IMG/VR virus record: IMGVR_UViG_3300044712_002668
Coordinates: 248,001 to 312,000 of that record
Length of the DNA: 64,000 bases
Direction: 5' to 3' (one strand)
Under the pieces are notes generated by a model. That model saw only the letters and a program-made list of their open reading frames with translations, made no database searches and had not been told where the DNA came from. Position 1 is the stretch's first letter; every line of letters starts with the position of its first letter. The translations under genes and the position numbers were made by a program. This document shows, in pieces, positions 8,127 to 54,059 of the stretch.

Positions 8127-9125
8127 ATGACTCAAACACAATCAATCAAGACTTCAAAGAAAACTCCTAAAAAGGAATTCTACTCTCCAGCATCTCCCAA
8201 GACATATAGAGCTGAGAAACCTGAGGTTTGGGCATCTGAACGAATCATGAATTTCATGATGGAGCGTTTGGAAGCATATAAGAAGAATCCTGATGGGAAG
8301 AAGATTGTATTGCCATGGCAGGCTACTTGGAGCCGTTCAACGATTCTTCCCCGCAGACATAAGACCAATAGAGTTTATCATGGTTTGAATTTGATGATGC
8401 TTTTGATGACGGGTTATGGTTCTCCATTTTATTTTTCGTATAAGGATATTTCGGAGCTTGGTGGTAAGGTTATCAAGGGACAGCATGGTTGGCCGGTGAG
8501 TTTCTGGTTTGAGGTCAAGAAGGAGCTTGCTGATGGTACCAAGGAAGGCACTGGATATTGGAAGTGTAGATATTTCAATATCTTCAATCTGGAGCAGACT
8601 GAGGGTATCGACCCTGCCAAGCTGCGTAAGATTGTAGTTGAAGAGGATAAGGATCATAATCCAATTGAGGAGTGTGAGGCTATTGTGGCTGGGTATGAGA
8701 ATCCTCCCAAGATTGTTTTCAAGGGACAGCAGCCATGTTACAGACCTCTGCTGGATCAGGTTGATATTCCGGCAATCAAGAAGTTCAAGACTCCTGAAGC
8801 CTACTATGCAACGTTGTTCCATGAGTTGGCTCACTCAACTGGTTCTGACAAGCGGCTGAATCGTGAGACTCTGGTGAAGGTTGCGGGTTTTGGAAGCCAT
8901 CTCTATTCCGAGGAGGAGTTGGTTGCCGAAGCTTGTGCCGCTATGCTCTGTCGTAAGGTTGGGATTGAGAATACTGTCATTGATAACTCTCTGGCTTATA
9001 TTGAAAACTGGATGAAGGCGCTTACCCCTGAGGTATTGGCAACATCCATCAAGGCAGCAGGTAAGGCGTATGAGCGGATAGTGGGAAACAGCGAGGCGGA
9101 GGAGAACAATGACGGAGAAGAATGA
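8127..9125 (+). CDS. ardC: ArdC-like ssDNA-binding / zincin antirestriction protein
   Basis: PWQ, YHGLN, GGKVIKG, FNLEQ, YYATLFHELAHSTG, YSEEELVAE. Confidence 0.85.
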   Translation: MTQTQSIKTSKKTPKKEFYSPASPKTYRAEKPEVWASERIMNFMMERLEAYKKNPDGKKIVLPWQATWSRSTILPRRHKTNRVYHGLNLMMLLMTGYGSPFYFSYKDISELGGKVIKGQHGWPVSFWFEVKKELADGTKEGTGYWKCRYFNIFNLEQTEGIDPAKLRKIVVEEDKDHNPIEECEAIVAGYENPPKIVFKGQQPCYRPLLDQVDIPAIKKFKTPEAYYATLFHELAHSTGSDKRLNRETLVKVAGFGSHLYSEEELVAEACAAMLCRKVGIENTVIDNSLAYIENWMKALTPEVLATSIKAAGKAYERIVGNSEAEENNDGEE

Positions 9126-34888: not shown

Positions 34889-37144
34889 ATGATGCAGAAT
34901 CGCTATCCAGGTAAGTGTCAGAGTTGTAATGTTCCCTTGGCTGCTGGAGAAGGTTTCGCTTACAAGAACGGTTATCGTTGGCTTCAATGTTGTAACTCAA
35001 CCGCTTGTATCAATCGTCTGGGTTTGAAAGCCCCCGCTTCCGCTGATATTCGCGGAGAACGAAAGATTACCGAGATTGGTGAGATTATCATGGGATTTGA
35101 TAGGGATGCCGTTCCTCTTATCAAATCTCTTCCTGGGGCTCGTTGGAACCCTGACAATAAGCTTTGGACTGTCTCTGTTATTCCTCGTGACCTTCCCCGT
35201 GTCATTGAGGTTTGCGATCAGTTGAAGCTGGATATTCCAGAATCTCTCAGGGCTTCTTTGAATGCCGGAACCGTGGACAGCAACAAGGCCCGAGCGAGAG
35301 CCGAAGCTGCTCGCCGCCATGATGGCAAAACTTTGTTCGAGTTCCAAAAGGATGGCGTTGTTTTCTTGGCTCTGCACGATCATGCACTCCTAGCGGACGA
35401 TATGGGACTTGGAAAGAGCGTGCAGGCTCTTGTTGCTCTCCCTGATAATGCTCAGGTGCTTCTAATCTGCCCGGCTGCTGTAAAGTATAACTGGCAGAAC
35501 GAAGCCAAGATGTGGCGTCCCGAATTTGAAACCATCGTTTGTGAAGGCAAGGATTCCTTTGTTCTTCCCAAGCCTAATCAAATTGTTATCATCAATTATG
35601 AAATCCTTCCCGCCTTTCTGGTTCCCAAAGAAGTTGAAGGTAAACTCACCAAGAGTGGTAAGCCATATAAGGAAGCTCCCATTCCTGATGATATCAGAAA
35701 GGAATTGAAGAATGTTATTTTGATTGGGGATGAGTTCCATAAGGTAAAGAATTATAAGAGCATGATGTCCCAGAAGATTGGGGCTATGACCAAACTCTGC
35801 AAGGTTGTTTGGGCTCTTACCGGTACTCCTCTTATGACTCGCCCTCAGGATTTGTTTGGGATGTTGGCATCTGGCAACATGTATCCATTTGGTTCATGGG
35901 ACAAGTTTGTTGAGAGGTTCAACGGATATAGAGGGCAGTATGGAATAGTATTTGGGAATCCCAAGCCGGAAGTTCCGGAGATGTTGAAGCGAGTATCTAT
36001 TCGCCGTTTGAAGACTGAGGTTTTGAAGGATCTTCCCACGAAGATTTATAAGGATATCCTTGTTGATATTGATAAGACTTTGAAGAAGTATCTTGATAAG
36101 GTTACATTGGAGATTGCAATCAATCAGGGACATGTAATTACTGATGAAGAGATTGCTGATGCCAAAAAGAATATGGATGATGTGGCTTTGAAGATTAATA
36201 TGAATGACCTTCCTAACTTCAAGGAGTTCTCCACTATCAGGCGTATGTTGGCTGAGGCCAGAATCCCTGCCATGATGGAGATTGTTGAGAGTTATGAGGA
36301 TAGCGAAACTCCTCTGGTTGTTTTCTCCGCTCATACCAAGCCTCTTGAGGAACTTGGTAAGCGTGATGGTTGGGGTATTATTACTGGTGATACTCCCGCT
36401 GTTACTCGTGAAAAGGCCAAGCAGGATTTCCAAGCCGGTAAGTTGAAGGGTATCGCTGTTGCTATCAAGGCAGGTGGTGTGGGTATTACACTCACACATG
36501 CTAGTCATGCATTGTTTGTGGATTTGGATTGGACGCCTGGATTGAATATACAGGCTGAGGATCGTATTTGCCGGATTGGAGCAACAACCGAGAATGTATT
36601 GATTCAGAGGATGACATCAAATCATCCAATGGATCAGCATATTAATAAGTTGATTTGCAAGAAGATAGCATTGATGTATGAGGCATTGGACAAGTCAATC
36701 AAGGTCAAGCCGTTGAAGAAGCGGCCTGAGAAGATTGAATTGGTAGAGGAGACTGAGGCTGATATGTTGGCGCGAATTGAAGCGGCCGGCAAGGAAGCTG
36801 AAAAGCAATTTTACAAGGATAAGGTTCATGGAATTTTGGGAAGGGAGTTGGCAAGGGCAGAAGGAATACCGGAACCCAAGCTTACACCCAAGCGCAAGGA
36901 ATTGATATTGAGGGCTTTGGATTATATGGCATCTCGTTGTGATGGAGCTGAGAGCCGGGATTATATGGGTTTCAATAAGCCCGATGCGGCGATTGCTCAA
37001 TGGTTGTATGGAGCTGAGTTTGCAGAGGATGAAGTAATCTGGAGGGTTACCGAAAGAATTTTGAGTAGGTATTATAGGCAGCTTGTTACCATTGGTAAGG
37101 AGTTTGGAGAGGACTTTACTGCTATCTGGAAGCCAGATGTATAA
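34889..37144 (+). CDS. SNF2-family (SMARCAL1/HARP-like) helicase
   Basis: LLADDMGLGKS, DEFH, LTGTP, GVGITL, QAEDRICRIG. Confidence 0.9.
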   Translation: MMQNRYPGKCQSCNVPLAAGEGFAYKNGYRWLQCCNSTACINRLGLKAPASADIRGERKITEIGEIIMGFDRDAVPLIKSLPGARWNPDNKLWTVSVIPRDLPRVIEVCDQLKLDIPESLRASLNAGTVDSNKARARAEAARRHDGKTLFEFQKDGVVFLALHDHALLADDMGLGKSVQALVALPDNAQVLLICPAAVKYNWQNEAKMWRPEFETIVCEGKDSFVLPKPNQIVIINYEILPAFLVPKEVEGKLTKSGKPYKEAPIPDDIRKELKNVILIGDEFHKVKNYKSMMSQKIGAMTKLCKVVWALTGTPLMTRPQDLFGMLASGNMYPFGSWDKFVERFNGYRGQYGIVFGNPKPEVPEMLKRVSIRRLKTEVLKDLPTKIYKDILVDIDKTLKKYLDKVTLEIAINQGHVITDEEIADAKKNMDDVALKINMNDLPNFKEFSTIRRMLAEARIPAMMEIVESYEDSETPLVVFSAHTKPLEELGKRDGWGIITGDTPAVTREKAKQDFQAGKLKGIAVAIKAGGVGITLTHASHALFVDLDWTPGLNIQAEDRICRIGATTENVLIQRMTSNHPMDQHINKLICKKIALMYEALDKSIKVKPLKKRPEKIELVEETEADMLARIEAAGKEAEKQFYKDKVHGILGRELARAEGIPEPKLTPKRKELILRALDYMASRCDGAESRDYMGFNKPDAAIAQWLYGAEFAEDEVIWRVTERILSRYYRQLVTIGKEFGEDFTAIWKPDV

Positions 37145-39387: not shown

Positions 39388-40260
39388 ATGGCATCTCACT
39401 CCACTGGTAGCTTTGTAATTGGTTTCGGACCTCTCACGTGTATGGTAAAGACCTACGTTTCAGCATCACCAACTCGTATTGGGTTCAAGTGGATCAATAA
39501 GAAGACGGGTAATCTTGTTGGTCAGAAGAAGTTTGACAAGGTAACTAACGAGGAAGTTCAGCAAGCAGATATTATTAATGGATATGAATATTCCAAGGAT
39601 AAGTATCTACACTTTACTGATGTAGAGGTAGATAATATGCAGGCTACGAAGAAGGATACGATGGAGATTGCGGAGTTCGTTCCGATCAGTTCCATTGATC
39701 CGTTGCAGGTAGAGAAGACGTTTTACCTACAGCCTGATAAGGGTCAGGATGGTAATTACAAGTTGTTCTCTGTTGTTCTAGCCAAGTGTGGCAGGGCTGC
39801 TGTTGGTAAGTGGGTATCACGAGGCAAGGAACATCTTGTTGTGATTCGTGCTTATCAGCATGGAATTATTATGCACCAGATGTTCTATCATAATGAGGTG
39901 CGTGGTTTTGAGGATAAGTGTTCTGCTGTTCCGCTCAATGAGAGGAACGTAAAGATTGCTGAGGAAATGATTTCTTATGGTTTGAGTGAGACGTTTGATT
40001 CCAAGAAGTATGCAGATATGTTTGTTGATAAGTTGAATGCTGCCGTGGCAAAGAAGTTGGCCAATCCTGATGAGCCGATTACTGCTGATACCGGAGCTGC
40101 TTTGAAGGTTATTGATCAGGGCGATGCAATGCTCGCTTGGCTTGATGCAAAGCGTAAGGAGAAGGCCCAGCCTGTTGCCGAGCCTGTTGTTGAGAAGCCT
40201 GAGCCTCTCAAGTTGACCTCCAAGCCTGCCAAGAAGGCCAGGGCAAAGAAGGCTTCTTAA
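39388..40260 (+). CDS. ku: Ku DNA end-binding protein
   Basis: GSFVIGFG..., INGYEYSKDKY, IAEFVP..IDP, FYLQPD, basic C-terminal tail. Confidence 0.88.
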   Translation: MASHSTGSFVIGFGPLTCMVKTYVSASPTRIGFKWINKKTGNLVGQKKFDKVTNEEVQQADIINGYEYSKDKYLHFTDVEVDNMQATKKDTMEIAEFVPISSIDPLQVEKTFYLQPDKGQDGNYKLFSVVLAKCGRAAVGKWVSRGKEHLVVIRAYQHGIIMHQMFYHNEVRGFEDKCSAVPLNERNVKIAEEMISYGLSETFDSKKYADMFVDKLNAAVAKKLANPDEPITADTGAALKVIDQGDAMLAWLDAKRKEKAQPVAEPVVEKPEPLKLTSKPAKKARAKKAS

Positions 40261-43833: not shown

Positions 43834-44793
43834 CTATTTGATTTGATTATAAACATCTTTAAATAATCTTGCTATCTTTACAAGCTCACTTATATGTGAG
43901 CTTTTTTTATTCTTACCAAACACACCAGAGATATACTTTTCTGCTTCTTGCAGGGTTTTCAATGGTTCCTTCCTTAATACGGATTCGTGTTTGGTTGCTT
44001 TACCATGAGCCTTTTCATAATTATCCCCATCATAAATCATATGTTCACACTCTATGATTTCATGAATGAGTATAGGGATGAGTTCTTTCTTTTCATAGTG
44101 TGATTCAATCCATATCGTATTGTTTGGTACATAGGAATACCTTCCAGGGTTTCCTCCCATAACAAAATCAGTATCAAACTTCTGACGTACCAAATTACCA
44201 TCTACAAGATTTACTTTATAACCGTATACTTCGCCAATTTCTTTTGTAACAACATCTTTATCAGAGATGTTTTTATGTTTTTTATATTTATCCATTCTCT
44301 TTTCTGGAGAATCTTTCTCTTTCCATAAAACAATTATACGTTTATCTACGGGTTTTTTATGGTTATCCTTTGGAAATGTAAACCATATCGGAGCGAATTC
44401 TTTTTGTGTGATGATTTTATATTCACCAACTGAAGGATCCATTATCTCTATCTCTGTATCGTTGATGTCAGATACTACAGAATAATGAGAATCATCATTG
44501 CTAAACCACTCTACAATGATTTGATAATTCTCTTTCAATAATTTCTCTACTTCTTTAAAAGAAGAATTGTTTTTTATATAACCTTTAAGATTATATTTCT
44601 TGGCACCGCTTAAAAGATCTTCAGCTTCTATACCATGCTCTTCAGTGGCACCGATATTCTTGGCAATATCTTCCAACTCTTCATGGGTATTATAGAAATG
44701 CAGGATGCTTTTCAGACATGCCGGTCCACAGAAACCTGGGGTCTGATCAATCGCTATAGGTTTTTTATAAAACTTTTCTTCAGCTTTCGTCAT
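43834..44793 (-). CDS. Peptidase C39-like domain fused to an HExxE domain
   Basis: Q..GFCGPACL, SHYSVV, IMDPS; C-terminal VDG..VR...IWIE...HEIIE...AHGKA. Confidence 0.75.
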   Translation of the reverse strand: MTKAEEKFYKKPIAIDQTPGFCGPACLKSILHFYNTHEELEDIAKNIGATEEHGIEAEDLLSGAKKYNLKGYIKNNSSFKEVEKLLKENYQIIVEWFSNDDSHYSVVSDINDTEIEIMDPSVGEYKIITQKEFAPIWFTFPKDNHKKPVDKRIIVLWKEKDSPEKRMDKYKKHKNISDKDVVTKEIGEVYGYKVNLVDGNLVRQKFDTDFVMGGNPGRYSYVPNNTIWIESHYEKKELIPILIHEIIECEHMIYDGDNYEKAHGKATKHESVLRKEPLKTLQEAEKYISGVFGKNKKSSHISELVKIARLFKDVYNQIK

Positions 44794-44833
44794 ACATTAA
44801 ATTCTGTAATATGCGATGACTAAGGTGCAGTAA

Positions 44834-47269
44834 ATGAAAGCAAACAAAGAACAGAATTTAAACAAGCATTTGTACTGTGTGATGCTTATGGCCATGCATT
44901 GTGCTGAATATCTTGGCGTCAATGATACGGCTCTCAAAGAGGTCATCGGGCTTTCTGCTTTCCTTCATGACGTAGGTAAGGCTACCAAATATTTTCAAAA
45001 CATCTCCCTCAGGGAAGAGAAGACCAGCACCAAAAAGTTTTTCGATCTTATTCGTGAACAGTATCCCCAATTTTCCGGAGAGGATGGTAAGGATTGGTAT
45101 CCGAGGCATAACGAAATCTCATGGTTGTGGGCGGCTCTACACGCTACCGGTAAGTCTCTGTTCAAGAAGGTTGGCCTCCAAGCTATCTATTGGCATCACG
45201 GAACCTTTGATATCAACCCTATCCGAGATACTGATACCAAATCCCTTGTAGAAGAATTGACCAAGTTCTCTCCCGATGAATGGAAAACCATTGACCAAAC
45301 AATCAAATCCCTTATTGATAATACAAACTTTCCTTTTGATATTACAAAGTATCTTGATGATAACATTGAACATTGTAAGATGTCACCTTTGTTTGATATT
45401 GAAGATAAGGCTGCCAATAATGGCATGATTGAAAACGCTCAGCGTTGGGTTATTCGTAGTTGTGTGATGTATGCTGATGCTACTGTTTCAAGGATGTCTT
45501 CCGATGAATTGAATGATCTAATTCTCAATAGAAATCCAGCTACTTATTTCAAGCCTTATTATCTCTCTGTGAAGCCTGAGTTTGTTTGTCCTGAAGGTTA
45601 CGATCCGGAACGTTTCAGGATTCAGAGTGAGATTTATAAGAGTTGTAATCATACTACGGTTGTAAAGGCTCCTGCTGGTTTCGGTAAGACCTTGATTGGT
45701 TTGATGTGGGGCCTGCTACATGGACAACAGTTCTATTGGGTTTGCCCTCGTAATGATGTTGCCCAAGGCGTTTTCGAAAACATCAAGGAAGAACTCCGTA
45801 GACTTAACATCAATATCAATGTTGAATTGTTCCTGACATCGGAACGTCAAGACTCATTTGGACCGAATGTACCGCATGTACATGGTACGTGTGACATTGT
45901 GGTAACGAACATTGATATGTTGATGGCTCCATTGCAGAGTCACAAGCATGCATGCAGGGTTTTTGATATCAATGCTCGTAACATTATCATGGATGAGTTC
46001 CATGAGTTGATTGGTGATGAAGGAATGTTTTCGGCCTTTATCAATTATATGAGGGCTCGCAATTTGATTTGCTCAAATACGAGAACCTTGCTCTTGTCAG
46101 CTACTCCTTCCGTCCTGAATGAACTTTGGGATAGCGATACAAAGCAAACCAGGCTTCTTCCAGATGATGAACATCATTATAAGGCTCAGCATGATAAGCC
46201 TTATTACTTCAAGTTCGCTACTGCAATGCCCACCAAGCCGTTGCCTGGCTCGTTGAGTATGTATTGCAGCATTTCCACTGTCATTGTAAATTACAATCCA
46301 AGAGTTCATACGGCAATTATTCACAGTCATTATCCAACGAATTACAAGAAGGACATTTTGAATGGAATTTTCAAGACCTTTGGAAAGGGAGGGGATAAGA
46401 ATGGGACTGTGATATCAGCGCCTATTCTACAGGCTGCATTTGATATTTCATTCAGGAGTATGTATAAGGCAGTTGAATCTCCTGAGGGAGACATTCAGCC
46501 ACTTGGGCGTGTGAATCGTTGGGGAGAGTTGGAGAGTGCAGAGGTTGTGTTGGTACCTTTGGCGGCTTCTAATCCTAGTGAACGGGGAGCAATCAATACC
46601 CGATATGATTTGGACCTGCACCGGGATTGGTTGAAGTATTTGAAGAACAATATAAAGTCAAAGGCTACGTTGGATGAGGTTTATTCTTTGTATAATGCTT
46701 ACAATAATGTTGCCAAGCCGAAGTTGATATCTTATTATTACAGGTGTTTGGATAAGGCAACTGAGAGATTGTCAAAGTTCTTCCCCAAGGACTTCGGAGT
46801 TTCCCGGCCTTCTCGTGATAATATCAAATCGGTTTCAAATCTGAGAAGTTATTCTCCATCATTCTTTATTGTAGTAAGGAATTTGAAGACCAAGGATTGG
46901 CATCCATTTGCTTTCAATATTCAGAACTATGATTTGGATGAGTGCATAAGTGAAAACCGGGAGAAGTTGGAAGCGTATACAATTAAAACTGTTATGGAGC
47001 ATTTGAATGAATTGAAGTTTGAGGATGGCGAATGTCATTTTGATTATAGTAAGATTTTGAATAGGTTCTTCAATCCAAAGAGGAAGAGTGAGAAGAAGAT
47101 TGGTGGCAAGCTTGTAAAGATAACTTCCAAGGTTCGTAAGAATTATAAGGCAGAAGATTTTATTGATTATATCAGGGAAACAAAAACGCCATTGCCGGTG
47201 TTTGATAGGTTCTTTGATCCTGTTCGTGGTTTGGTTAAGGAAGAGTTTTTGTACGCAATCAATTATTGA
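44834..47269 (+). CDS. cas3: Cas3 HD nuclease-helicase (no N-terminal Cas2 domain)
   Basis: KHL...LHDVGK HD domain, HHG, YAD; APAGFGKT, DEFH, SAT, QPLGRVNR. Confidence 0.92.
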   Translation: MKANKEQNLNKHLYCVMLMAMHCAEYLGVNDTALKEVIGLSAFLHDVGKATKYFQNISLREEKTSTKKFFDLIREQYPQFSGEDGKDWYPRHNEISWLWAALHATGKSLFKKVGLQAIYWHHGTFDINPIRDTDTKSLVEELTKFSPDEWKTIDQTIKSLIDNTNFPFDITKYLDDNIEHCKMSPLFDIEDKAANNGMIENAQRWVIRSCVMYADATVSRMSSDELNDLILNRNPATYFKPYYLSVKPEFVCPEGYDPERFRIQSEIYKSCNHTTVVKAPAGFGKTLIGLMWGLLHGQQFYWVCPRNDVAQGVFENIKEELRRLNININVELFLTSERQDSFGPNVPHVHGTCDIVVTNIDMLMAPLQSHKHACRVFDINARNIIMDEFHELIGDEGMFSAFINYMRARNLICSNTRTLLLSATPSVLNELWDSDTKQTRLLPDDEHHYKAQHDKPYYFKFATAMPTKPLPGSLSMYCSISTVIVNYNPRVHTAIIHSHYPTNYKKDILNGIFKTFGKGGDKNGTVISAPILQAAFDISFRSMYKAVESPEGDIQPLGRVNRWGELESAEVVLVPLAASNPSERGAINTRYDLDLHRDWLKYLKNNIKSKATLDEVYSLYNAYNNVAKPKLISYYYRCLDKATERLSKFFPKDFGVSRPSRDNIKSVSNLRSYSPSFFIVVRNLKTKDWHPFAFNIQNYDLDECISENREKLEAYTIKTVMEHLNELKFEDGECHFDYSKILNRFFNPKRKSEKKIGGKLVKITSKVRKNYKAEDFIDYIRETKTPLPVFDRFFDPVRGLVKEEFLYAINY

Positions 47270-47304
47270 AGTTCAATCAACCAACCAACAAGGAAAAAAA
47301 CAGC

Positions 47305-48417
47305 ATGTCAATCGCCAAGTCTCTGCTTCTTCGTGTCCTTTTCAATGGTGATGGAATCGTCAATTTTGATTCTCCGGATCAAAAGTATCTTTGGAACAAG
47401 TTGGAGGGGGCAGGTTTTATCAGGCACAATAATACCATGGTTGGAAAGGCCAGGTATGAGTCAAAAAAGGTAACTCGTCAGAATCAGGATAAAGAGGATT
47501 ATGAGAAGGAGGTTTATACACGGGTTCCAATCAATTCTGCAGACTGCATTCGTCATACCATGTATGAAGATGTGATGCGAACGCATCTTCCCAATGTTCA
47601 GCATGATGATGATTGGTTGATTCGTACCATTGCAAACCCTGCTTTCATCCAGCGTGGGTATATGTTCCCCCGTGCCAACAAGGAATCTTGGAAGCGCAAG
47701 TCTTCATTGGCTTTCGGTTATGCCAAGGGTATTACGCCAAGTGTTCCGGCAATTGAAACGTTTTCAAATTCTCAAGAAAGGGATAATGTTGAGAAGAGCG
47801 AGAGTGGTTCTGAGACATCTTTCTTCTCTCGTGAGGTTCGAGGACAAGTAAATTATGAAATGACTGGAGTAATTGATTTGGCTGAGCTTGGGTTTATCTC
47901 CTTGAGTGATGTTCATGATCGTTTGGGATTCCATCCCGATCTTGATGGTGAGTTTATTGAGATGTTCAAGAAGCATTTCAAGTTTGAGGATACGATTACT
48001 TCTGGGTATTTTGTTCGTGAAGGTGATGCTTATGAGATTCCTGAGCAGGGTATTCTGCTTGGGGACAAGTATGTTATCGCCATGGTTGAGGATATCCTGA
48101 AGCGTTTGGCCAGGTTCAATTTGGTTCGTACCACTACTGGTTTTCTTCAGACTGCCAAGGTTGAGGTTATGGTTGTCAAGGATCCTTTGACTGACCGTGT
48201 TACCAATACTGATGGTTGGATTAATGTTTTTGATAATGGTAAGTTTTCTGTTGACTTTTTGAAGGGTCTCAAGATTGAGCGTGTTTATAATGAGACCTCT
48301 ATTGAGGAGGCTATTGAGAAGGTTCGGCATTATAAGGAACTGAAGAATGTTGATGAGCCGGTTGTGGAAGCCAAGCCCCCGAAGAAGCCGCGTGGCAAGA
48401 AAGAGGCGGCGGCATGA
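47305..48417 (+). CDS. cas7: Cas7, type I-F2 (I-Fv)-like
   Basis: GDGIVNFD, INSADCIRH, QRGYMFP, KRKSSL, TSFFSR, LGFISLSDVHDR, EQGILL match, in order, motifs recalled from Shewanella Cas7fv; AAGGAA RBS. Confidence 0.85.
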   Translation: MSIAKSLLLRVLFNGDGIVNFDSPDQKYLWNKLEGAGFIRHNNTMVGKARYESKKVTRQNQDKEDYEKEVYTRVPINSADCIRHTMYEDVMRTHLPNVQHDDDWLIRTIANPAFIQRGYMFPRANKESWKRKSSLAFGYAKGITPSVPAIETFSNSQERDNVEKSESGSETSFFSREVRGQVNYEMTGVIDLAELGFISLSDVHDRLGFHPDLDGEFIEMFKKHFKFEDTITSGYFVREGDAYEIPEQGILLGDKYVIAMVEDILKRLARFNLVRTTTGFLQTAKVEVMVVKDPLTDRVTNTDGWINVFDNGKFSVDFLKGLKIERVYNETSIEEAIEKVRHYKELKNVDEPVVEAKPPKKPRGKKEAAA

Positions 48418-49316
48418 GCAAGTATATTCTGCTTCTGGATTTTCAAAACGCAGGAATCTTTAAAAAGTATTGGCATAAAACAGAGCCTCGCTCTGCTTCC
48501 GGTGATGACCGTATTTTTGATGGAAAGAATTCCGATTATCGTCGTAAGGATCAATGGATTGAACCTTCTACGGTAACCTTTCATTATAGTTTTATTGAGA
48601 ATGTTTTGAGAGTTCTTGCCGGGCGTAGACCCGTTCCTAAGTATCGCTCATCCTGTGTTGAACATGATGATGATATAATCAGGTTGGCTAAAAATAGTTA
48701 TGTAAAAATTGATGCATTGGTCAGGCATTGGGAGGGGAAGCCTGACACATTTGCCACAGAGACCATGACAGTCAGGAAGGCGTCATGGAATGCATGGAAT
48801 CAGGGTTGTATAGTTGGTTGGAAAAGGTTGGAGAATTTGTTGCCTGAGGATTTGTTCAATGAATTCTGTAGATTGGTTGAGAATATTTTTGGAATTGATT
48901 ATTATAGAAAGGTTACGTTGAGTAAGGTTATTGAGAAGATTCATACGATGAAGAATGATAAGAGGATCATATCATTGTGTGACAGGGCGGTAGCCGTTTC
49001 GTGTACAAATTTCAAGCATCTATTGTTGGAAACTGGGCAGCCAACATTTTTTCAAGCCAGTTATAAGAAGTATGGGGATTCAACGGAAGCGAATGTTTGT
49101 ATGAGAACCTTGACTGTGAAGGGAATTGCTGATGTAAGCAGATTGGATGGTATGATTGGAGTACCTGTAACGGCTGAAGAGTTGGAGATGTTCCGCAAGG
49201 GTCGTGGATTTGCCACATTGTTTGATGGGGGTTTGGTAACTATAAACAAGGTTGTAGATTTGGAGTATTCAAACACTGGTGTAGTTTTGAATGGGTATAC
49301 GCAAGCACTACAATGA
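48414..49316 (+). CDS. cas5: Cas5, probably Cas5fv-like (enlarged, replacing Cas8)
   Basis: Position in operon, 300 aa, IENVLRVLAG helix, helical insert, C-terminal GFATLFDGGLVTI Gly loop. Confidence 0.65.
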   Translation: MSKYILLLDFQNAGIFKKYWHKTEPRSASGDDRIFDGKNSDYRRKDQWIEPSTVTFHYSFIENVLRVLAGRRPVPKYRSSCVEHDDDIIRLAKNSYVKIDALVRHWEGKPDTFATETMTVRKASWNAWNQGCIVGWKRLENLLPEDLFNEFCRLVENIFGIDYYRKVTLSKVIEKIHTMKNDKRIISLCDRAVAVSCTNFKHLLLETGQPTFFQASYKKYGDSTEANVCMRTLTVKGIADVSRLDGMIGVPVTAEELEMFRKGRGFATLFDGGLVTINKVVDLEYSNTGVVLNGYTQALQ

Positions 49317-49834
49317 ACCTGTATAAAATCCACAAGGCATTTGCGAATCCTTATCAGAACCACCAGGCATTGAAGAACTTGTTTCTGGGAGAGGGGCGGG
49401 TTCTTTTCCAGAACTTGGGTTCTTCTTTATTGGTGCTTTCTCAAATAAAGTTGAGCGATGAATACCGGAATAACTTTTTGATTGATTTTCTTGATATTGA
49501 TAATTGTTTGAATGGTGACATTATGAATTTTTCTATCAGGTTGAATGCTTGCAAGGGCAGTCAGGGCAAGCGATATACGTTGAAGGAGGATGAATTTGAG
49601 AGGTGGGTTGATTGGAAGATGGGACAAGCTGGAGTTTCATTGGTTAAGAAGAGCATTCATAATGAGGGAGTTATTGTTAGTGACAGGCAGGGTGGGCATT
49701 GTTATCATGCTTCATTGTTTGTATCTGGTATATTGAAGGTTGAGGATAGGGTTTTGTTCAGCAAATCGGTTGAGCTTGGCATTGGACATGGCAAAGCTTT
49801 CGGGTTCGGGTTGTTGAATGTGTTTACGTGTTAG
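49313..49834 (+). CDS. cas6: Compact Cas6e-like crRNA endonuclease
   Basis: YQNHQALKNLF, FSIRLNACK, GILKVED...GIGHGKAFGFGLL. Confidence 0.85.
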   Translation: MNLYKIHKAFANPYQNHQALKNLFLGEGRVLFQNLGSSLLVLSQIKLSDEYRNNFLIDFLDIDNCLNGDIMNFSIRLNACKGSQGKRYTLKEDEFERWVDWKMGQAGVSLVKKSIHNEGVIVSDRQGGHCYHASLFVSGILKVEDRVLFSKSVELGIGHGKAFGFGLLNVFTC

Positions 49835-51460
49835 AGTTCTCTACTGGTTTTTGTAGGGATTGAAATAAATCTGTCGCTCAGCGCTCCTTTGCCTCGTTGA
49901 ATTGAATTCCCTACTATATTATGTAGGGGTTGAAATGAGCAATTGGCCATAGCTTTCAGGGAACAATACGATCATTGAATTCCCTACTATATTATGTAGG
50001 GGTTGAAATCCCCCAACGACCTGGAGTTTTTACAGATCCAATTAAATTCCCTACTATATGTAGGGATTGAAACCGAATCAGGATATGTCGTCGTGGTTGT
50101 GTATCGGTATAATTGAATTCCCTATTATATAGGGATTGAAAAGTCGCATTCGAAGTCAAGACCGCTATTGGTAAAGTATTCCTACTATATGTAGGGATTG
50201 AAACACCCTGCGTTGGGCCCGAAAGAGACCGGCGGTTGTCCGATTGAATTTCCTACTGTATGTAGGGATTGAAATATAGGAGGCTCCCTCGGGGATGTGT
50301 CAGTGCGAACATTGAATTCCCTGCTATGTGTAGGGATTGAAATGATGTGGTCGGTGCCATATTCCTACCGCGTGACTGAATTTCCTACTGTATGTAGGGA
50401 TTGAAACTCCGTTGGTTCCCGCGAGATGGTTATCGTGGAGGTATTGATTCCCTATTATATAGGGATTGAAATAACGTTTTTGAAGGTCCGTCGCGTATAG
50501 CTTAGTTTAGTTTCCTACTATATGTAGGGATTGAAACGTGCGTATGACATAGAAGTGTGTTGCCGTGATGGTTCCCTGCTGTATGTAGGGATTGAAATCT
50601 TAGTTTCACCGGAATTCAGGTGATGACATTTATTTCCCTGCTTTATGTAGGGATTGAAATGCGAGCAGTCTAAATTCTTCGGCAGTCAGTTTGGAGTCGG
50701 TTTTCCTACCAAGGTAGGGATTGAAATGGTGGACATAACCAGAATAGTCGTGGACTTGTAGTTAATCCCTAATAAAATAGGGGTTGAAATGTAGTTGGCG
50801 GATTTAAAGGAGACCAACTAAATCTCCCTACAATATGTAGGGGTTGAAACTTTCTCTCTTTTCCGCGTCCATCAGTCTTTATGATTCCCCGCTATATGCA
50901 GGGATTGAAATCCGCAACCACCGTTTAGTCCTGCTAACATTACGTAGTTCTCCGCTATATGCGGAGGTTGAAACCCTACTCCGTCTTTCAGTGACGCTAC
51001 CGTTTTTATTCCCTATTTATGTAGGGGTTGAAATAAGGATGGATCCAATCATTGGGATGTTCTATTGTCTCCCTATTTATGTAGGGATTGAAACAGCGGA
51101 AGAACTCAATCTTTCCAAGTTTGATTGATAGTTTCCCTACTAAATATAGGGATTGAAATGCTATTTATGATATGATTCAGCGTGTCAAAATAGTTTTCCT
51201 ACTGTAGTGTAGGGATTGAAACTCCACTGCATCTAGTACAGCGAATGATTCTTAATGTCCCTGCTAATAAGCAGGGGTTGAAACTACCCTGATAGACTGC
51301 CTTCTATTGATTATGATGATTCCCTACAATATGTAGGGATTGAAATCGTCAGGCTATTGATGAGAATGCCATTGTTCAATGTCCCTGCTGATGTAGGGGT
51401 TGAAATCAAAGCACGCCTTCGGGCAGTACAATTAGAATCATCTCCCTACACCATGTAGGG
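49834..51460 (+). CRISPR. CRISPR array, 26 degenerate repeats and 25 spacers
   Basis: Consensus about (ATTGAA)TTCCCTACTATATGTAGGG[A/G]TTGAAA[C/T]; period 60-73 nt; last repeat lacks TTGAAA. Confidence 0.95.
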
Positions 51461-51731
51461 ACTCGGAGAATACAATGAAAGATAAAGATACTCTAAAGCC
51501 TTTATACATCTGGCTCTCCTGCACCCATGCACGAGGCGATTCCTACGAGGAGGCTTTCCAAGAAGCCTTGACCAAGAAGCCGGAAATTGCTAACCTTACT
51601 TGGAAGGGTGTCCCTCTAGGTCATTACGAAGCAACAAATTCTTTCTATAATCAAACTTATAATTTCATCCCTAACGGAAAGTTCTCAGAATTTGTTTTTG
51701 AGGCTCAATGATAATATTTCAGTATTGATTT

Positions 51732-53015: not shown

Positions 53016-54059
53016 ATGCACGAGAAAATGAATAAGGTTTTGGCTGGCCTTGGTATCAATGGTAAGTGCATCCTCGCTAACCAACACCGTCATCTTGCTT
53101 ATTTCGATATATCTCTTGAACCGCGTACTTCTATTCGTACCCTGGAAAGGAATGCCCGAGAGATAGCCTTGGGCATTCGTAGCAAGACCACACCTATTGT
53201 TAAGGTGATTCCCGAGGAGGGAGTTGTAAGGCTTCAGGTAGCAATGGAGGATGCCAAGCCTATTCTTCATAAATCTATTTACAATCGTACATTTCAGGTA
53301 AAGGAGATTCTTCCATTTATCCTTGGCGAGGATGAAACGGGCAACAAGCTTGTTATGGATATGGTAAAGAATCCTCATCTTCTTATTGCGGGTGGTACAG
53401 GTTCTGGCAAGTCCGTTCTACTACATAATCTTATTGCGAATGCTATTTATCTTCGAGCAATCAAGTTCACCAATACCGATTTGATTCTGGTTGATCCCAA
53501 GCGTGTGGAGTTCAACTTCTATAATGATCCTTTGTTTCCGTTTATTCATATTGAGAACACGTATGAAGGTTGTGTAGAGATGCTTGAGGAGATGGTGTTG
53601 GTCATGGAGCGAAGGTATGCTCATATGGCTAGTATCAATGTCCGTAGTGTTGAGGATGATCCTGGTTTGTTTGTATTCAAGATGATTGTGATTGATGAGG
53701 TTTCCGACCTTATTCTGCAGGATAAGGAGAAGCATCTTCATGATTTGTTGATTACTCTGGCTCAGAAGGGCCGAGCTGCTGGTATCTATATTGTTCTGGC
53801 TACTCAGCGTCCCAGTGTGGATATTATTACTGGTACTATCAAGGCTAATTTCCCTGGCCGGATTGCTTGTAAGACTGCTTCCCGTATTGATTCAAAGGTT
53901 ATTCTTGATGAAATTGGAGCCGAGAGTTTGCTGGGCCGAGGCGATGCCATCCTGAAGAACATGGAACATGATAGGGTCAGGTTTCAGGTTGCCTATACGG
54001 ATGAGAATCAGATTAAATCTACCTATAAGTTCTTTACTGAATACTACAGGGCAGCATGA
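53016..54059 (+). CDS. FtsK/SpoIIIE ATPase (no transmembrane domain)
   Basis: PHLLIAGGTGSGKS, VDPKRVE, IDEVSD, GRAAGI..LATQRP, GAESLLGRGD. Confidence 0.9.
   Translation: MHEKMNKVLAGLGINGKCILANQHRHLAYFDISLEPRTSIRTLERNAREIALGIRSKTTPIVKVIPEEGVVRLQVAMEDAKPILHKSIYNRTFQVKEILPFILGEDETGNKLVMDMVKNPHLLIAGGTGSGKSVLLHNLIANAIYLRAIKFTNTDLILVDPKRVEFNFYNDPLFPFIHIENTYEGCVEMLEEMVLVMERRYAHMASINVRSVEDDPGLFVFKMIVIDEVSDLILQDKEKHLHDLLITLAQKGRAAGIYIVLATQRPSVDIITGTIKANFPGRIACKTASRIDSKVILDEIGAESLLGRGDAILKNMEHDRVRFQVAYTDENQIKSTYKFFTEYYRAA

What the first reader, a model, noticed from the sequence alone, without database searches (positions are those of the whole stretch)
44834..49834. Chimeric minimal phage type I CRISPR-Cas: Cas3 + Cas7fv/Cas5fv-like + Cas6e-like
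Seen: four contiguous genes and no cas8, cas11, cas1, cas2 or cas4 in the locus. Established: I-F2 (I-Fv) Cascade lacks Cas8 but uses Cas6f and a Cas2-Cas3 fusion. Here Cas7 follows the Cas7fv motifs in order (from memory), yet Cas3 begins directly with the HD domain and the 173-aa Cas6 has Cas6e signatures. Nuclease and helicase motifs look intact. cas7 has the same AAGGAA-A-rich-CATG RBS as strongly expressed phage genes, suggesting a domesticated system. Inference: a possibly undescribed subtype variant and a ~5-kb interference module attractive for engineering.
Basis: partly seen in the sequence, partly recalled or inferred. Interest (0 to 1): 0.9.

Follow-up and report, generated by a model that had tools for sequence, protein, structure and literature searches.

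The report
Phage minimal type I CRISPR system
A 336-kb phage genome carries an intact four-gene, Cas8-less CRISPR-Cas3 interference module related to the known minimal type I-F2 system, but with a different RNA-processing enzyme (Cas6e-like), no spacer-acquisition genes and a fixed 25-guide array; relatives occur in many other metagenomic contigs, so it is a distinct variant rather than a one-off.

Summary
Four tightly packed + strand genes sit at 44834-49834: cas3, cas7 (real start 47305), a cas5 candidate and cas6.

- **Cas3:** it belongs to the I-F2 (Cas3fv) lineage and simply lacks the N-terminal Cas2 domain. All HD and helicase motifs are intact.
- **Cas7:** it is Cas7fv-like, but scores below NCBI's equivalog cut-off.
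- **Cas5 candidate (300 aa):** it has no sequence match to any known family. A confident AlphaFold model finds Cas5fv as its best PDB match, with modest scores.
- **Cas6:** it is Cas6e-like, not Cas6f.
- **Missing genes:** no Cas1, Cas2, Cas4 or Cas8 domain was found in the other 115 ORFs of the window.

So "chimeric" applies only to Cas6.

The same operon recurs in other large IMG/VR and metagenomic contigs. A sister clade uses a classical Cas6 instead. The Cas5-like family has 499 clusters at 50% identity.

Relatives have uniform repeats and a leader. This window's array abuts cas6, and its repeats vary widely. Even so, the hairpin is kept through compensatory changes and the 8-nt handle is conserved.

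No spacer target was found. I rate this a new variant of a known kind, of moderate interest.

The parts
44834..47269 (+). cas3: stand-alone HD nuclease plus SF2 helicase (811 aa), Cas3fv lineage without a Cas2 domain
   Evidence: Pfam and NCBIfam find HD, DEAD and Cas3_C domains. PADLOC Cas3fv scores 226 bits, aligned to profile positions 112-769 of 951. PDB 9g44_A matches at E 2e-41. BLASTP to a plasmid I-F2 Cas2-3 gives E 3e-44, starting at its residue 118. Invariant across relatives: H12, H45-D46, H92, H121-H122, D215, GxGK 282-285, DExH 387-390, SAT 422-424, QxxGRxxR 555-562.
47305..48417 (+). cas7: Cas7fv-like backbone subunit (370 aa); the mechanical ORF starts at a TTG at 47266
   Evidence: NCBIfam Cas7fv 81.5 bits, below the 200-bit cut-off. 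PADLOC Cas7fv 64 bits, Cas7f 47 bits. PDB 5o6u_C and 9g44_F at E 7e-9. The precomputed Pfam family PF28157 (Cas7fv-like) is recorded for its gene call P0001 and its homologues. The RBS AAGGAAAAAAACAGC precedes the ATG.
48414..49316 (+). cas5 candidate: Cas5fv-like cap subunit (300 aa) with a helical insertion at about residues 136-205
   Evidence: No sequence hit in Pfam, NCBIfam, PADLOC or PDB. hhalign against Cas5fv is not significant. The AF2 model has pLDDT 91.8 and pTM 0.81. The Foldseek top hits are 5o6u_F and 9g44_B, which are Cas5fv, at E 5e-3 and 1e-2, probability 0.89 and 0.77, TM 0.32-0.35. Other Cas5-like chains follow. It occupies the same position as cas5fv in canonical loci.
49313..49834 (+). 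cas6: Cas6e-like crRNA endoribonuclease (173 aa)
   Evidence: PF08798 63 bits and TIGR01907 51 bits, both above cut-off. PADLOC Cas6e 70 bits. The family profile hits only Cas6e chains in the PDB. His17, invariant in the family, aligns with His20 of E. coli CasE, though that N-terminal stretch of the alignment is not significant on its own. No similarity to Cas6f.
49839..51469 (+). CRISPR array: 26 hairpin repeats, 25 of them with the 8-nt handle [AG]TTGAAA[CTA], giving 25 spacers. The last repeat is degenerate. There is no leader: the first repeat starts 4 nt after the cas6 stop codon.
   Evidence: A 6-bp stem is kept in 153 of 156 pair positions, with C-G to U-A, A-U to G-C and U-A to C-G double changes. 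On 13 equal-length repeats, 97.4% of cells are paired, 3 pairs change on both sides, and 1 of 500 shuffles reaches that. The 5' part of the repeat (ATTGAATT) survives only in the first ~9 units.

Best explanation
This is a functional, phage-borne, interference-only type I CRISPR-Cas module from a lineage sister to type I-F2 (I-Fv).

1. The array is transcribed with, or just after, the cas operon.
2. The Cas6e-like nuclease cuts each repeat at the 3' base of its 6-bp hairpin. This leaves an 8-nt 5' handle, (A/G)UUGAAA(C/U), and the nuclease stays on the 3' hairpin.
3. The Cas5fv-like protein caps the handle. Its helical insertion reads the PAM in place of Cas8.
4. About six Cas7fv-like subunits coat the spacer and also do the job of Cas11.
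5. Once the R-loop forms, the stand-alone Cas3 is recruited directly by Cas7 and Cas5, as in the solved I-F2 structure, and degrades the target DNA.

With no Cas1, Cas2 or Cas4 and no leader, the array is a fixed set of 25 guides. It most likely serves against competing phages or mobile elements, or against host DNA. The targets are unknown.
For: - The operon is intact and has I-F2 gene order.
- Cas3 is specifically Cas3fv-like and all its catalytic motifs are invariant.
- Cas7 matches Cas7fv.
- The best fold match of the Cas5 candidate is Cas5fv.
- Cas6 is Cas6e-like and its candidate catalytic His is conserved.
- In the array the hairpin and handle are conserved through compensatory changes while the rest of the repeat has drifted. 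This points to selection on processing and loading.
- The same four-gene set is conserved in many divergent large viral and metagenomic contigs.
- The window's proteins keep 45 of the 47 most conserved Cas7 columns.
- A Cas2-truncated I-F2 Cas3 still binds the Cascade R-loop complex (PMC12956352).
- Cas7, the multi-copy subunit, has the strongest RBS.
Against: - No protospacer was found. There are no self hits in the window or the fetched loci, none in the phage or plasmid collections, and five spacers scanned in IMG/VR matched only the array itself.
- Cas5 identity rests on a modest Foldseek match (TM about 0.33) plus synteny. There is no sequence support.
- The window's array is degenerate and has no leader, unlike those of its relatives. 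Its Cas7 sits on a long branch. Both could also mean relaxed selection.
- There are no expression or activity data.
Confidence: 0.72

Rival explanations
1. It is a decaying relic. The system lost adaptation and its leader, the array is drifting, and the module no longer does anything useful.
For: The repeats vary widely, with at least 20 distinct versions among the 26 copies, and the 5' repeat part is lost in most units. There is no leader, unlike L001 and L004. No targets were found. The window's Cas7 has a long terminal branch.
Against: All four ORFs are intact and overlap or abut one another. The catalytic motifs of Cas3 and the conserved His of Cas6 are kept. The stems are held by compensatory double changes, and the handle keeps an invariant TTGAAA core in 25 of 26 repeats. 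Neutral decay would not preserve these. 45 of the 47 most conserved Cas7 columns are retained.
Confidence: 0.13
2. It is a DNA-binding or silencing device rather than a DNA shredder, or it needs host factors. The complex would repress host or competitor genes, or rely on a host Cas8 or host Cas1-Cas2 supplied in trans.
For: Many phage CRISPR systems lack components, and host complementation has been proposed for them (PMC7162821). Relatives have uniform repeats without their own cas1, which suggests spacer acquisition in trans at some time.
Against: The Cas3 HD and helicase motifs are intact and conserved across the family. Cas3 is in the operon in most loci. The related I-F2 system works without Cas8 (PMC12956352). 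The window's array has no leader for acquisition in trans.
Confidence: 0.1
3. It is not phage-borne at all. It is a bacterial or plasmid type I-E or I-F2 locus on a contig wrongly classed as viral.
For: The window carries plasmid-like genes: ArdA, ArdC, PcfJ, FtsK-like. Three relatives sit in MAG bins. One distant relative is IS-rich.
Against: The window lies on a 335,988-bp IMG/VR contig. Relatives sit on IMG/VR or metagenomic contigs of 124-463 kb whose fetched flanks hold many short, mostly unannotated ORFs plus genes such as Thy1, a GIY-YIG/NUMOD3 endonuclease, radical SAM, NAD-ligase and Thg1. Two scans of 185,579 species genomes found only three MAG contigs. There are no matches in the phage or plasmid reference collections apart from distant canonical I-F2 loci. 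I did not confirm virion genes in the window beyond a weak HK97-gp10-like hit.
Confidence: 0.05

Closest known systems
Type I-F2 (I-Fv) CRISPR-Cas of Shewanella putrefaciens CN-32 and of plasmids (PDB 5O6U, 5O7H, 9G44; loci L033 and L034)
   Same: No Cas8 or Cas11. Gene order is cas3-cas7-cas5-cas6. Cas3 and Cas7 are the closest sequence relatives. The Cas5 candidate has Cas5fv as its best fold match and carries a helical insertion. The crRNA has an 8-nt handle and a 3' hairpin.
   Different: No Cas2 domain on Cas3 and no cas1. Cas6e-like instead of Cas6f. Cas7 scores below the Cas7fv equivalog cut-off and branches far from plasmid Cas7fv. Cas5 has no detectable sequence similarity to Cas5fv. 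Repeats are 33-36 nt with handle RUUGAAAY, rather than 27-28 nt with a different 3' end (the I-F array of L033 begins GTTCACTGCCGTATAGGCAG; PMC12956352). It is carried by large viral contigs, not by gammaproteobacterial plasmids or islands.
Type I-E (E. coli or T. fusca Cascade)
   Same: A Cas6e-family endoribonuclease with the conserved His and the C-terminal G-rich loop. The hairpin is followed by an 8-nt handle.
   Different: No Cas8e, Cas11 (Cse2), Cas7e or Cas5e signatures. Cas3 and Cas7 are of the I-F2 lineage.
Vibrio phage ICP1 type I-F1 system
   Same: A phage-encoded type I system with an active Cas3-type nuclease, used in conflicts between genetic elements (PMC10161043).
   Different: ICP1 has Cas8f (Csy1), a Cas2/3 fusion, Cas1 and an adapting array (PMC10161043, PMC11656645). 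This system has none of these.
Huge-phage type I-C variant (Al-Shayeb et al. 2020)
   Same: It is found in huge phages and lacks Cas1 and Cas2 (PMC7162821).
   Different: That variant lacks Cas6, uses a Cas5d-like protein for processing, and has another helicase in place of Cas3. Here there is a Cas6e-like nuclease and a true HD-helicase Cas3.

Membership tests
Type I CRISPR-Cas | Cas3 with an HD nuclease and an SF2 helicase | tested here: met
   TIGR01596 cas3_HD 53 bits (above cut-off). DEAD and Cas3_C domains present. All motifs invariant.
Type I CRISPR-Cas | Cascade genes (Cas7, Cas5, Cas6) next to a CRISPR array | tested here: met
   Cas7 and Cas6 are identified by HMM and Cas5 by fold. 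The array directly abuts cas6.
Type I-F2 (I-Fv) | [quoted passage not shown] | tested here: met
   Only four genes in the operon. No Cas8 or Cas11 family in the 64-kb window. The rest of the genome was not seen.
Type I-F2 (I-Fv) | Cas7fv | tested here: inconclusive
   NF040577 is the best NCBIfam hit at 81.5 bits, but the cut-off is 200. The Pfam 'Cas7fv-like' family PF28157 is recorded for it. In the tree it sits far from plasmid Cas7fv.
Type I-F2 (I-Fv) | Cas5fv with a helical PAM-reading domain | tested here: inconclusive
   No sequence match. The predicted fold's best PDB match is Cas5fv, at probability 0.89 but TM only about 0.33. A helical insertion is present at residues 136-205.
Type I-F2 (I-Fv) | Cas6f (Csy4) nuclease | tested here: not met
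   No Cas6f hit. BLASTP to plasmid Cas6f gives E 0.66. The protein matches Cas6e models instead.
Type I-F2 (I-Fv) | Cas2-Cas3 fusion and Cas1f adaptation module | tested here: not met
   Cas3 aligns from residue 118 of Cas2-3, and the roughly 110-aa Cas2 part is absent from all viral and metagenomic homologues aligned. No Cas1 or Cas2 in the window.
Type I-E | Cas6e | tested here: met
   TIGR01907 51.3 bits against a cut-off of 45.2. PF08798 63 bits.
Type I-E | Cas8e, Cas11 (Cse2), Cas7e, Cas5e | tested here: not met
   None of these families was hit by any protein of the operon or the window.

The most novel reading that the evidence does not exclude
The viral and metagenomic loci found here may form an undescribed, subtype-level lineage of Cas8/Cas11-less type I systems. 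Its features would be:
- It is sister to I-F2 and is carried mainly by large phages.
- The Cas7-Cas5-Cas3 core is conserved, while the Cas6 module and its repeat hairpin have been exchanged at least once (Cas6e-like versus classical Cas6, against Cas6f in I-F2).
- In this particular phage, the guide set has become hard-wired. The array has no leader or adaptation genes, and selection maintains only the hairpin and the handle of each repeat.
Probability: 0.45. Interest if true: 0.65.

Novelty: new variant of a known kind. Interest (0 to 1): 0.5.

Why it matters
**Evolution.** The Cas8-less I-F2 architecture would not be an oddity of a few gammaproteobacterial plasmids. It would have a large, diverse sister lineage in large phages, with 499 clusters at 50% identity for the Cas5-like subunit. 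That lineage shows Cas6 behaving as an exchangeable module on a conserved Cas7-Cas5-Cas3 core.

**Engineering.** The four genes span 5.0 kb. Cas3 is 811 aa, against 982-994 aa for the two plasmid Cas2-3 proteins compared here. That makes the module somewhat smaller than canonical I-F2, which is already being developed for large-deletion genome editing.

**The array.** It is a natural example of a multi-guide array whose repeats have diverged while keeping the elements needed for processing. This is relevant to designing recombination-stable synthetic arrays.

None of this overturns current understanding. It extends a known kind.

Tried and rejected
- **Near and protein-level searches of the reference phage collection** found nothing.
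- **Sequence routes to name the 300-aa protein all failed:** Pfam, NCBIfam, PADLOC, PDB phmmer and hmmsearch with 12- and 111-sequence profiles, and hhalign against Cas5fv. The word-indexed homologue search found only 2 relatives. The exhaustive profile search was needed.
- **The first AF2 model**, built from a 12-sequence alignment, was mediocre (pLDDT 70). I replaced it with the 111-sequence model.
- **MAFFT on all 25 repeats** put loop-length gaps at the 5' end, so the stems were out of register. I counted pairs with my own in-register script and used the tool only on 13 equal-length repeats.
- **Spacer targets:** none in the window, in the fetched loci, in the phage or plasmid collections, or for five spacers in IMG/VR. 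A 26/28 match of spacer 20 to Microviridae at E 0.5 was judged chance. Spacers of relatives do not hit this window.
- **Rfam** gave only a sub-threshold snoRNA hit over repeats 1-3, judged spurious.
- **The promoter and terminator scan** was no better than shuffles.
- **Al-Shayeb et al. 2022 (Cell)**, the paper most likely to have catalogued such loci, is not held. Prior description therefore cannot be excluded.
- **Rejected idea:** that Cas3 came from another subtype. The I-G and I-B hits are weak and cover the HD domain only.
Full report
**What is there.**

Four + strand ORFs occupy 44834-47269 (811 aa), 47266-48417, 48414-49316 (300 aa) and 49313-49834 (173 aa). The second gene most likely starts at the ATG at 47305. 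That start gives the 370-aa product recorded as a gene call (P0001), and it is preceded by AAGGAAAAAAACAGC.

It begins 4 nt after the cas6 stop codon and spans 49839-51469.

On the opposite strand, just upstream of cas3, is a C39-peptidase-domain gene.

The window is part of the 335,988-bp IMG/VR contig IMGVR_UViG_3300044712_002668.

**The four proteins.**

*Cas3.*
- It has the HD, DEAD and Cas3 C-terminal domains.
- Its only PDB match below E 0.01 is 9g44_A (E 2e-41), the Cas2-truncated Cas3 of the Shewanella I-F2 system.
- PADLOC's Cas3fv model scores 226 bits against 71 bits for the next model. The match covers profile positions 112-769 of 951, so the Cas2 part is missing.
- BLASTP to the Cas2-3 of an Acinetobacter I-F2 plasmid gives E 3e-44 and starts at its residue 118.
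- In an alignment with seven viral or metagenomic homologues and two plasmid Cas2-3 proteins, the roughly 110-aa Cas2 domain is absent from the window's Cas3 and from all seven homologues.
- In the same alignment the HD motifs (H12, H45-D46, H92, H121-H122, D215), Walker A (282-285), DExH (387-390), SAT (422-424) and motif VI (555-562) are invariant.

*Cas7.*
- Its best hits are the Cas7fv models: NCBIfam 81.5 bits (cut-off 200) and PADLOC 64 bits.
- It matches the Cas7fv chains 5o6u_C and 9g44_F at E 7e-9.

*The 300-aa protein.*
- It has no sequence match anywhere.
- Profile-profile comparison with Cas5fv is not significant.
- An exhaustive profile search nevertheless found 499 clusters at 50% identity, 220 of them at E <= 1e-30.
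- A 111-sequence alignment gave a confident AlphaFold model, with pLDDT 91.8 and pTM 0.81.
- The model's two best PDB matches are 5o6u_F and 9g44_B, at probability 0.89 and 0.77 and TM 0.32-0.35. These chains are Cas5fv. Cas5e, Cas5c, Csf3 and Cmr3 follow.
- The model is a RAMP-like sheet with a helical insertion at about residues 136-205.
- Together with its position between cas7 and cas6, this makes it a Cas5fv-like cap subunit. The support is moderate, not strong.

*Cas6.*
- It passes the Cas6e thresholds: PF08798 63 bits and TIGR01907 51 bits.
- A family profile hits only Cas6e chains in the PDB.
- The invariant His17 aligns with His20 of E. coli CasE, although that N-terminal stretch of the alignment is not significant on its own.
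- There is no similarity to Cas6f.

**What is absent.**

Pfam scans of the other 115 ORFs of the window found no Cas1, Cas2, Cas4 or Cas8 family. The remaining ~270 kb of the genome could not be read.

**Relatives.**

- The Cas7 search found 28 clusters, all metagenomic and at most 49% identical.
- The same cas3-cas7-cas5-cas6-array layout occurs on a 196-kb JGI contig. That Cas7 protein is also recorded on a 463-kb contig. The layout also occurs on a 49-kb NCBI contig, on several IMG/VR contigs of 124-392 kb, and on further metagenome contigs.
- Two scans of 185,579 species-representative genomes found only three MAG contigs.
- A second clade, with 27-33% Cas7 identity, has the same Cas3, Cas7 and Cas5 but a classical Cas6 (TIGR01877, 75 bits) and a different repeat. 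In some of its loci cas3 lies after the array.
- In a Cas7 tree the viral and metagenomic proteins form a group far from plasmid Cas7fv. The Cas6e-bearing clade is monophyletic (100/100), and the window's protein has a long terminal branch.
- Canonical I-F2 loci on Acinetobacter and Legionella plasmids have the order cas1f, cas2-3, cas7fv, cas5fv, cas6f.
- The window therefore holds an I-F2-like core that lacks the adaptation parts and carries a different Cas6. "Chimeric" applies only to Cas6.

**The array.**

- There are 26 hairpins. Of these, 25 are followed by the 8-nt handle [AG]TTGAAA[CTA], which defines 25 spacers.
- Relatives with Cas6e-like proteins have uniform 32-36-nt repeats of the same design: an 8-nt 5' part, a 6-bp stem, a 4-8-nt loop and GTTGAAAC or a close variant (GTCGAAAC, GTTGAAAG). 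Two of them also have 185-205 nt of leader.
- In the window the repeats have diverged widely, with at least 20 distinct versions among the 26 copies.
- The 5' part (ATTGAATT) survives in the first ~9 units only.
- The period falls from 70-73 nt to 60-63 nt along the array.
- There is no leader.
- Even so, the stem is paired in 153 of 156 positions, through U-G wobbles and full double changes: C-G to U-A, A-U to G-C, U-A to C-G.
- On 13 equal-length repeats, 97.4% of cells are paired and three pairs change on both sides. Only 1 of 500 shuffles reaches that, and slid registers give 22-56% pairing.
- This is what selection on Cas6 recognition and handle binding would leave, in an array that no longer acquires spacers and is no longer homogenised.
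- The 2025 classification notes the same link between missing adaptation modules and substituted repeats for type VII (PMC12669027).

**Targets.**

None was found.
- There are no matches of spacers to the rest of the window or to the fetched loci.
- There are none in the phage or plasmid collections.
- Five spacers scanned in IMG/VR, allowing every sixth base to vary, matched only the array itself. This also excludes self-targets elsewhere on the 336-kb contig for those five.
- Spacers of relatives do not hit this window.

**Mechanism.**

Each is inferred from homology to I-F2 and I-E components and from the solved structures.
1. The Cas6e-like enzyme cuts at the 3' base of each hairpin.
2. 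Cas5 binds the 8-nt handle and reads the PAM with its helical insertion.
3. Cas7 subunits form the backbone.
4. Cas3 is recruited by Cas7 and Cas5 without Cas8, as in 9G44 (PMC12956352), and degrades the target.

The strong RBS on cas7 alone fits its multi-copy stoichiometry.

The main rival is a decaying relic. The intact ORFs, the conserved motifs and the compensatory stem changes argue against it.

**Novelty.**

- The classification paper lists I-F1 to I-F4 and a variant intermediate between I-F1 and I-F2 (PMC12669027).
- Full-text searches for Cas7fv or Cas5fv, for I-F2-like or Cas8-less systems, and for huge-phage CRISPR systems found no description of this architecture.
- The huge-phage paper describes a different type I-C variant (PMC7162821).
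- Pfam already has a "Cas7fv-like" family that covers these proteins.
- The 2022 Cell survey of phage CRISPR systems is not held, so prior cataloguing cannot be excluded.
- I rate it a new variant of a known kind, with moderate interest.

Noticed in passing
window 43834-44793 (- strand): A gene for a C39 peptidase-domain protein (319 aa; PF03412, E 5.5e-16) with no ABC-transporter part lies divergently, right upstream of cas3. There is a faint lambda ea8.5-like match at its C-terminus.
   Followed up: no
window 1-28361 and 28375-63433: Anti-restriction and host-takeover style genes are present: ArdA, ArdC (8127-9122), PcfJ, IF-1 homologue, GroES (Cpn10), Ku (39388-40257) with an ATP-dependent DNA ligase, SNF2-type helicase (34889-37141), FtsK/SpoIIIE-like ATPase (53016-54056), pyrimidine-dimer glycosylase and DUF7873. 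The only virion hint is a weak HK97-gp10-like hit.
   Followed up: partly
window 1-64000: GC skew is positive in 31 of the 32 2-kb bins (-0.02 at 44001-46000) and reaches +0.5. About 99 of 119 kept ORFs are on the + strand.
   Followed up: no
L009 8001-14327; L010 5688-10597; L026; L028; L029: A sister clade of the same Cas8-less system uses a classical Cas6 (TIGR01877) of 234-240 aa, with repeats ending in AATCACAAC. In L009 and L026 cas3 lies downstream of the array.
   Followed up: partly
L008 10541-12110: A 392-kb IMG/VR contig has the four cas genes (792, 358, 310 and 175 aa) but no CRISPR array within the 1.5 kb available downstream of cas6.
   Followed up: no
L039 3369-7290: In a distant, IS-rich locus, cas7 and the cas5-like gene are separated by a reverse transcriptase gene (RVT_1, likely a group II intron). 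Several transposases flank them.
   Followed up: no
L037 5599-10514: A contig binned to a Smithella MAG has cas7, cas5 and a Cas6e-like gene right after CoA-transferase and other metabolic genes, with no cas3 upstream. Its Cas7 is on a very long branch.
   Followed up: partly
window 49867-51442: Spacer lengths are irregular: 28-38 nt after subtracting the 8-nt 5' repeat remnant. Repeats 2 and 3 are identical 36-mers, while most others differ from one another.
   Followed up: partly
window 51109-51136: Spacer 20 has a 26/28 match to a VP4-like gene of two pig-faeces Microviridae genomes (E 0.5). It is probably chance.
   Followed up: no
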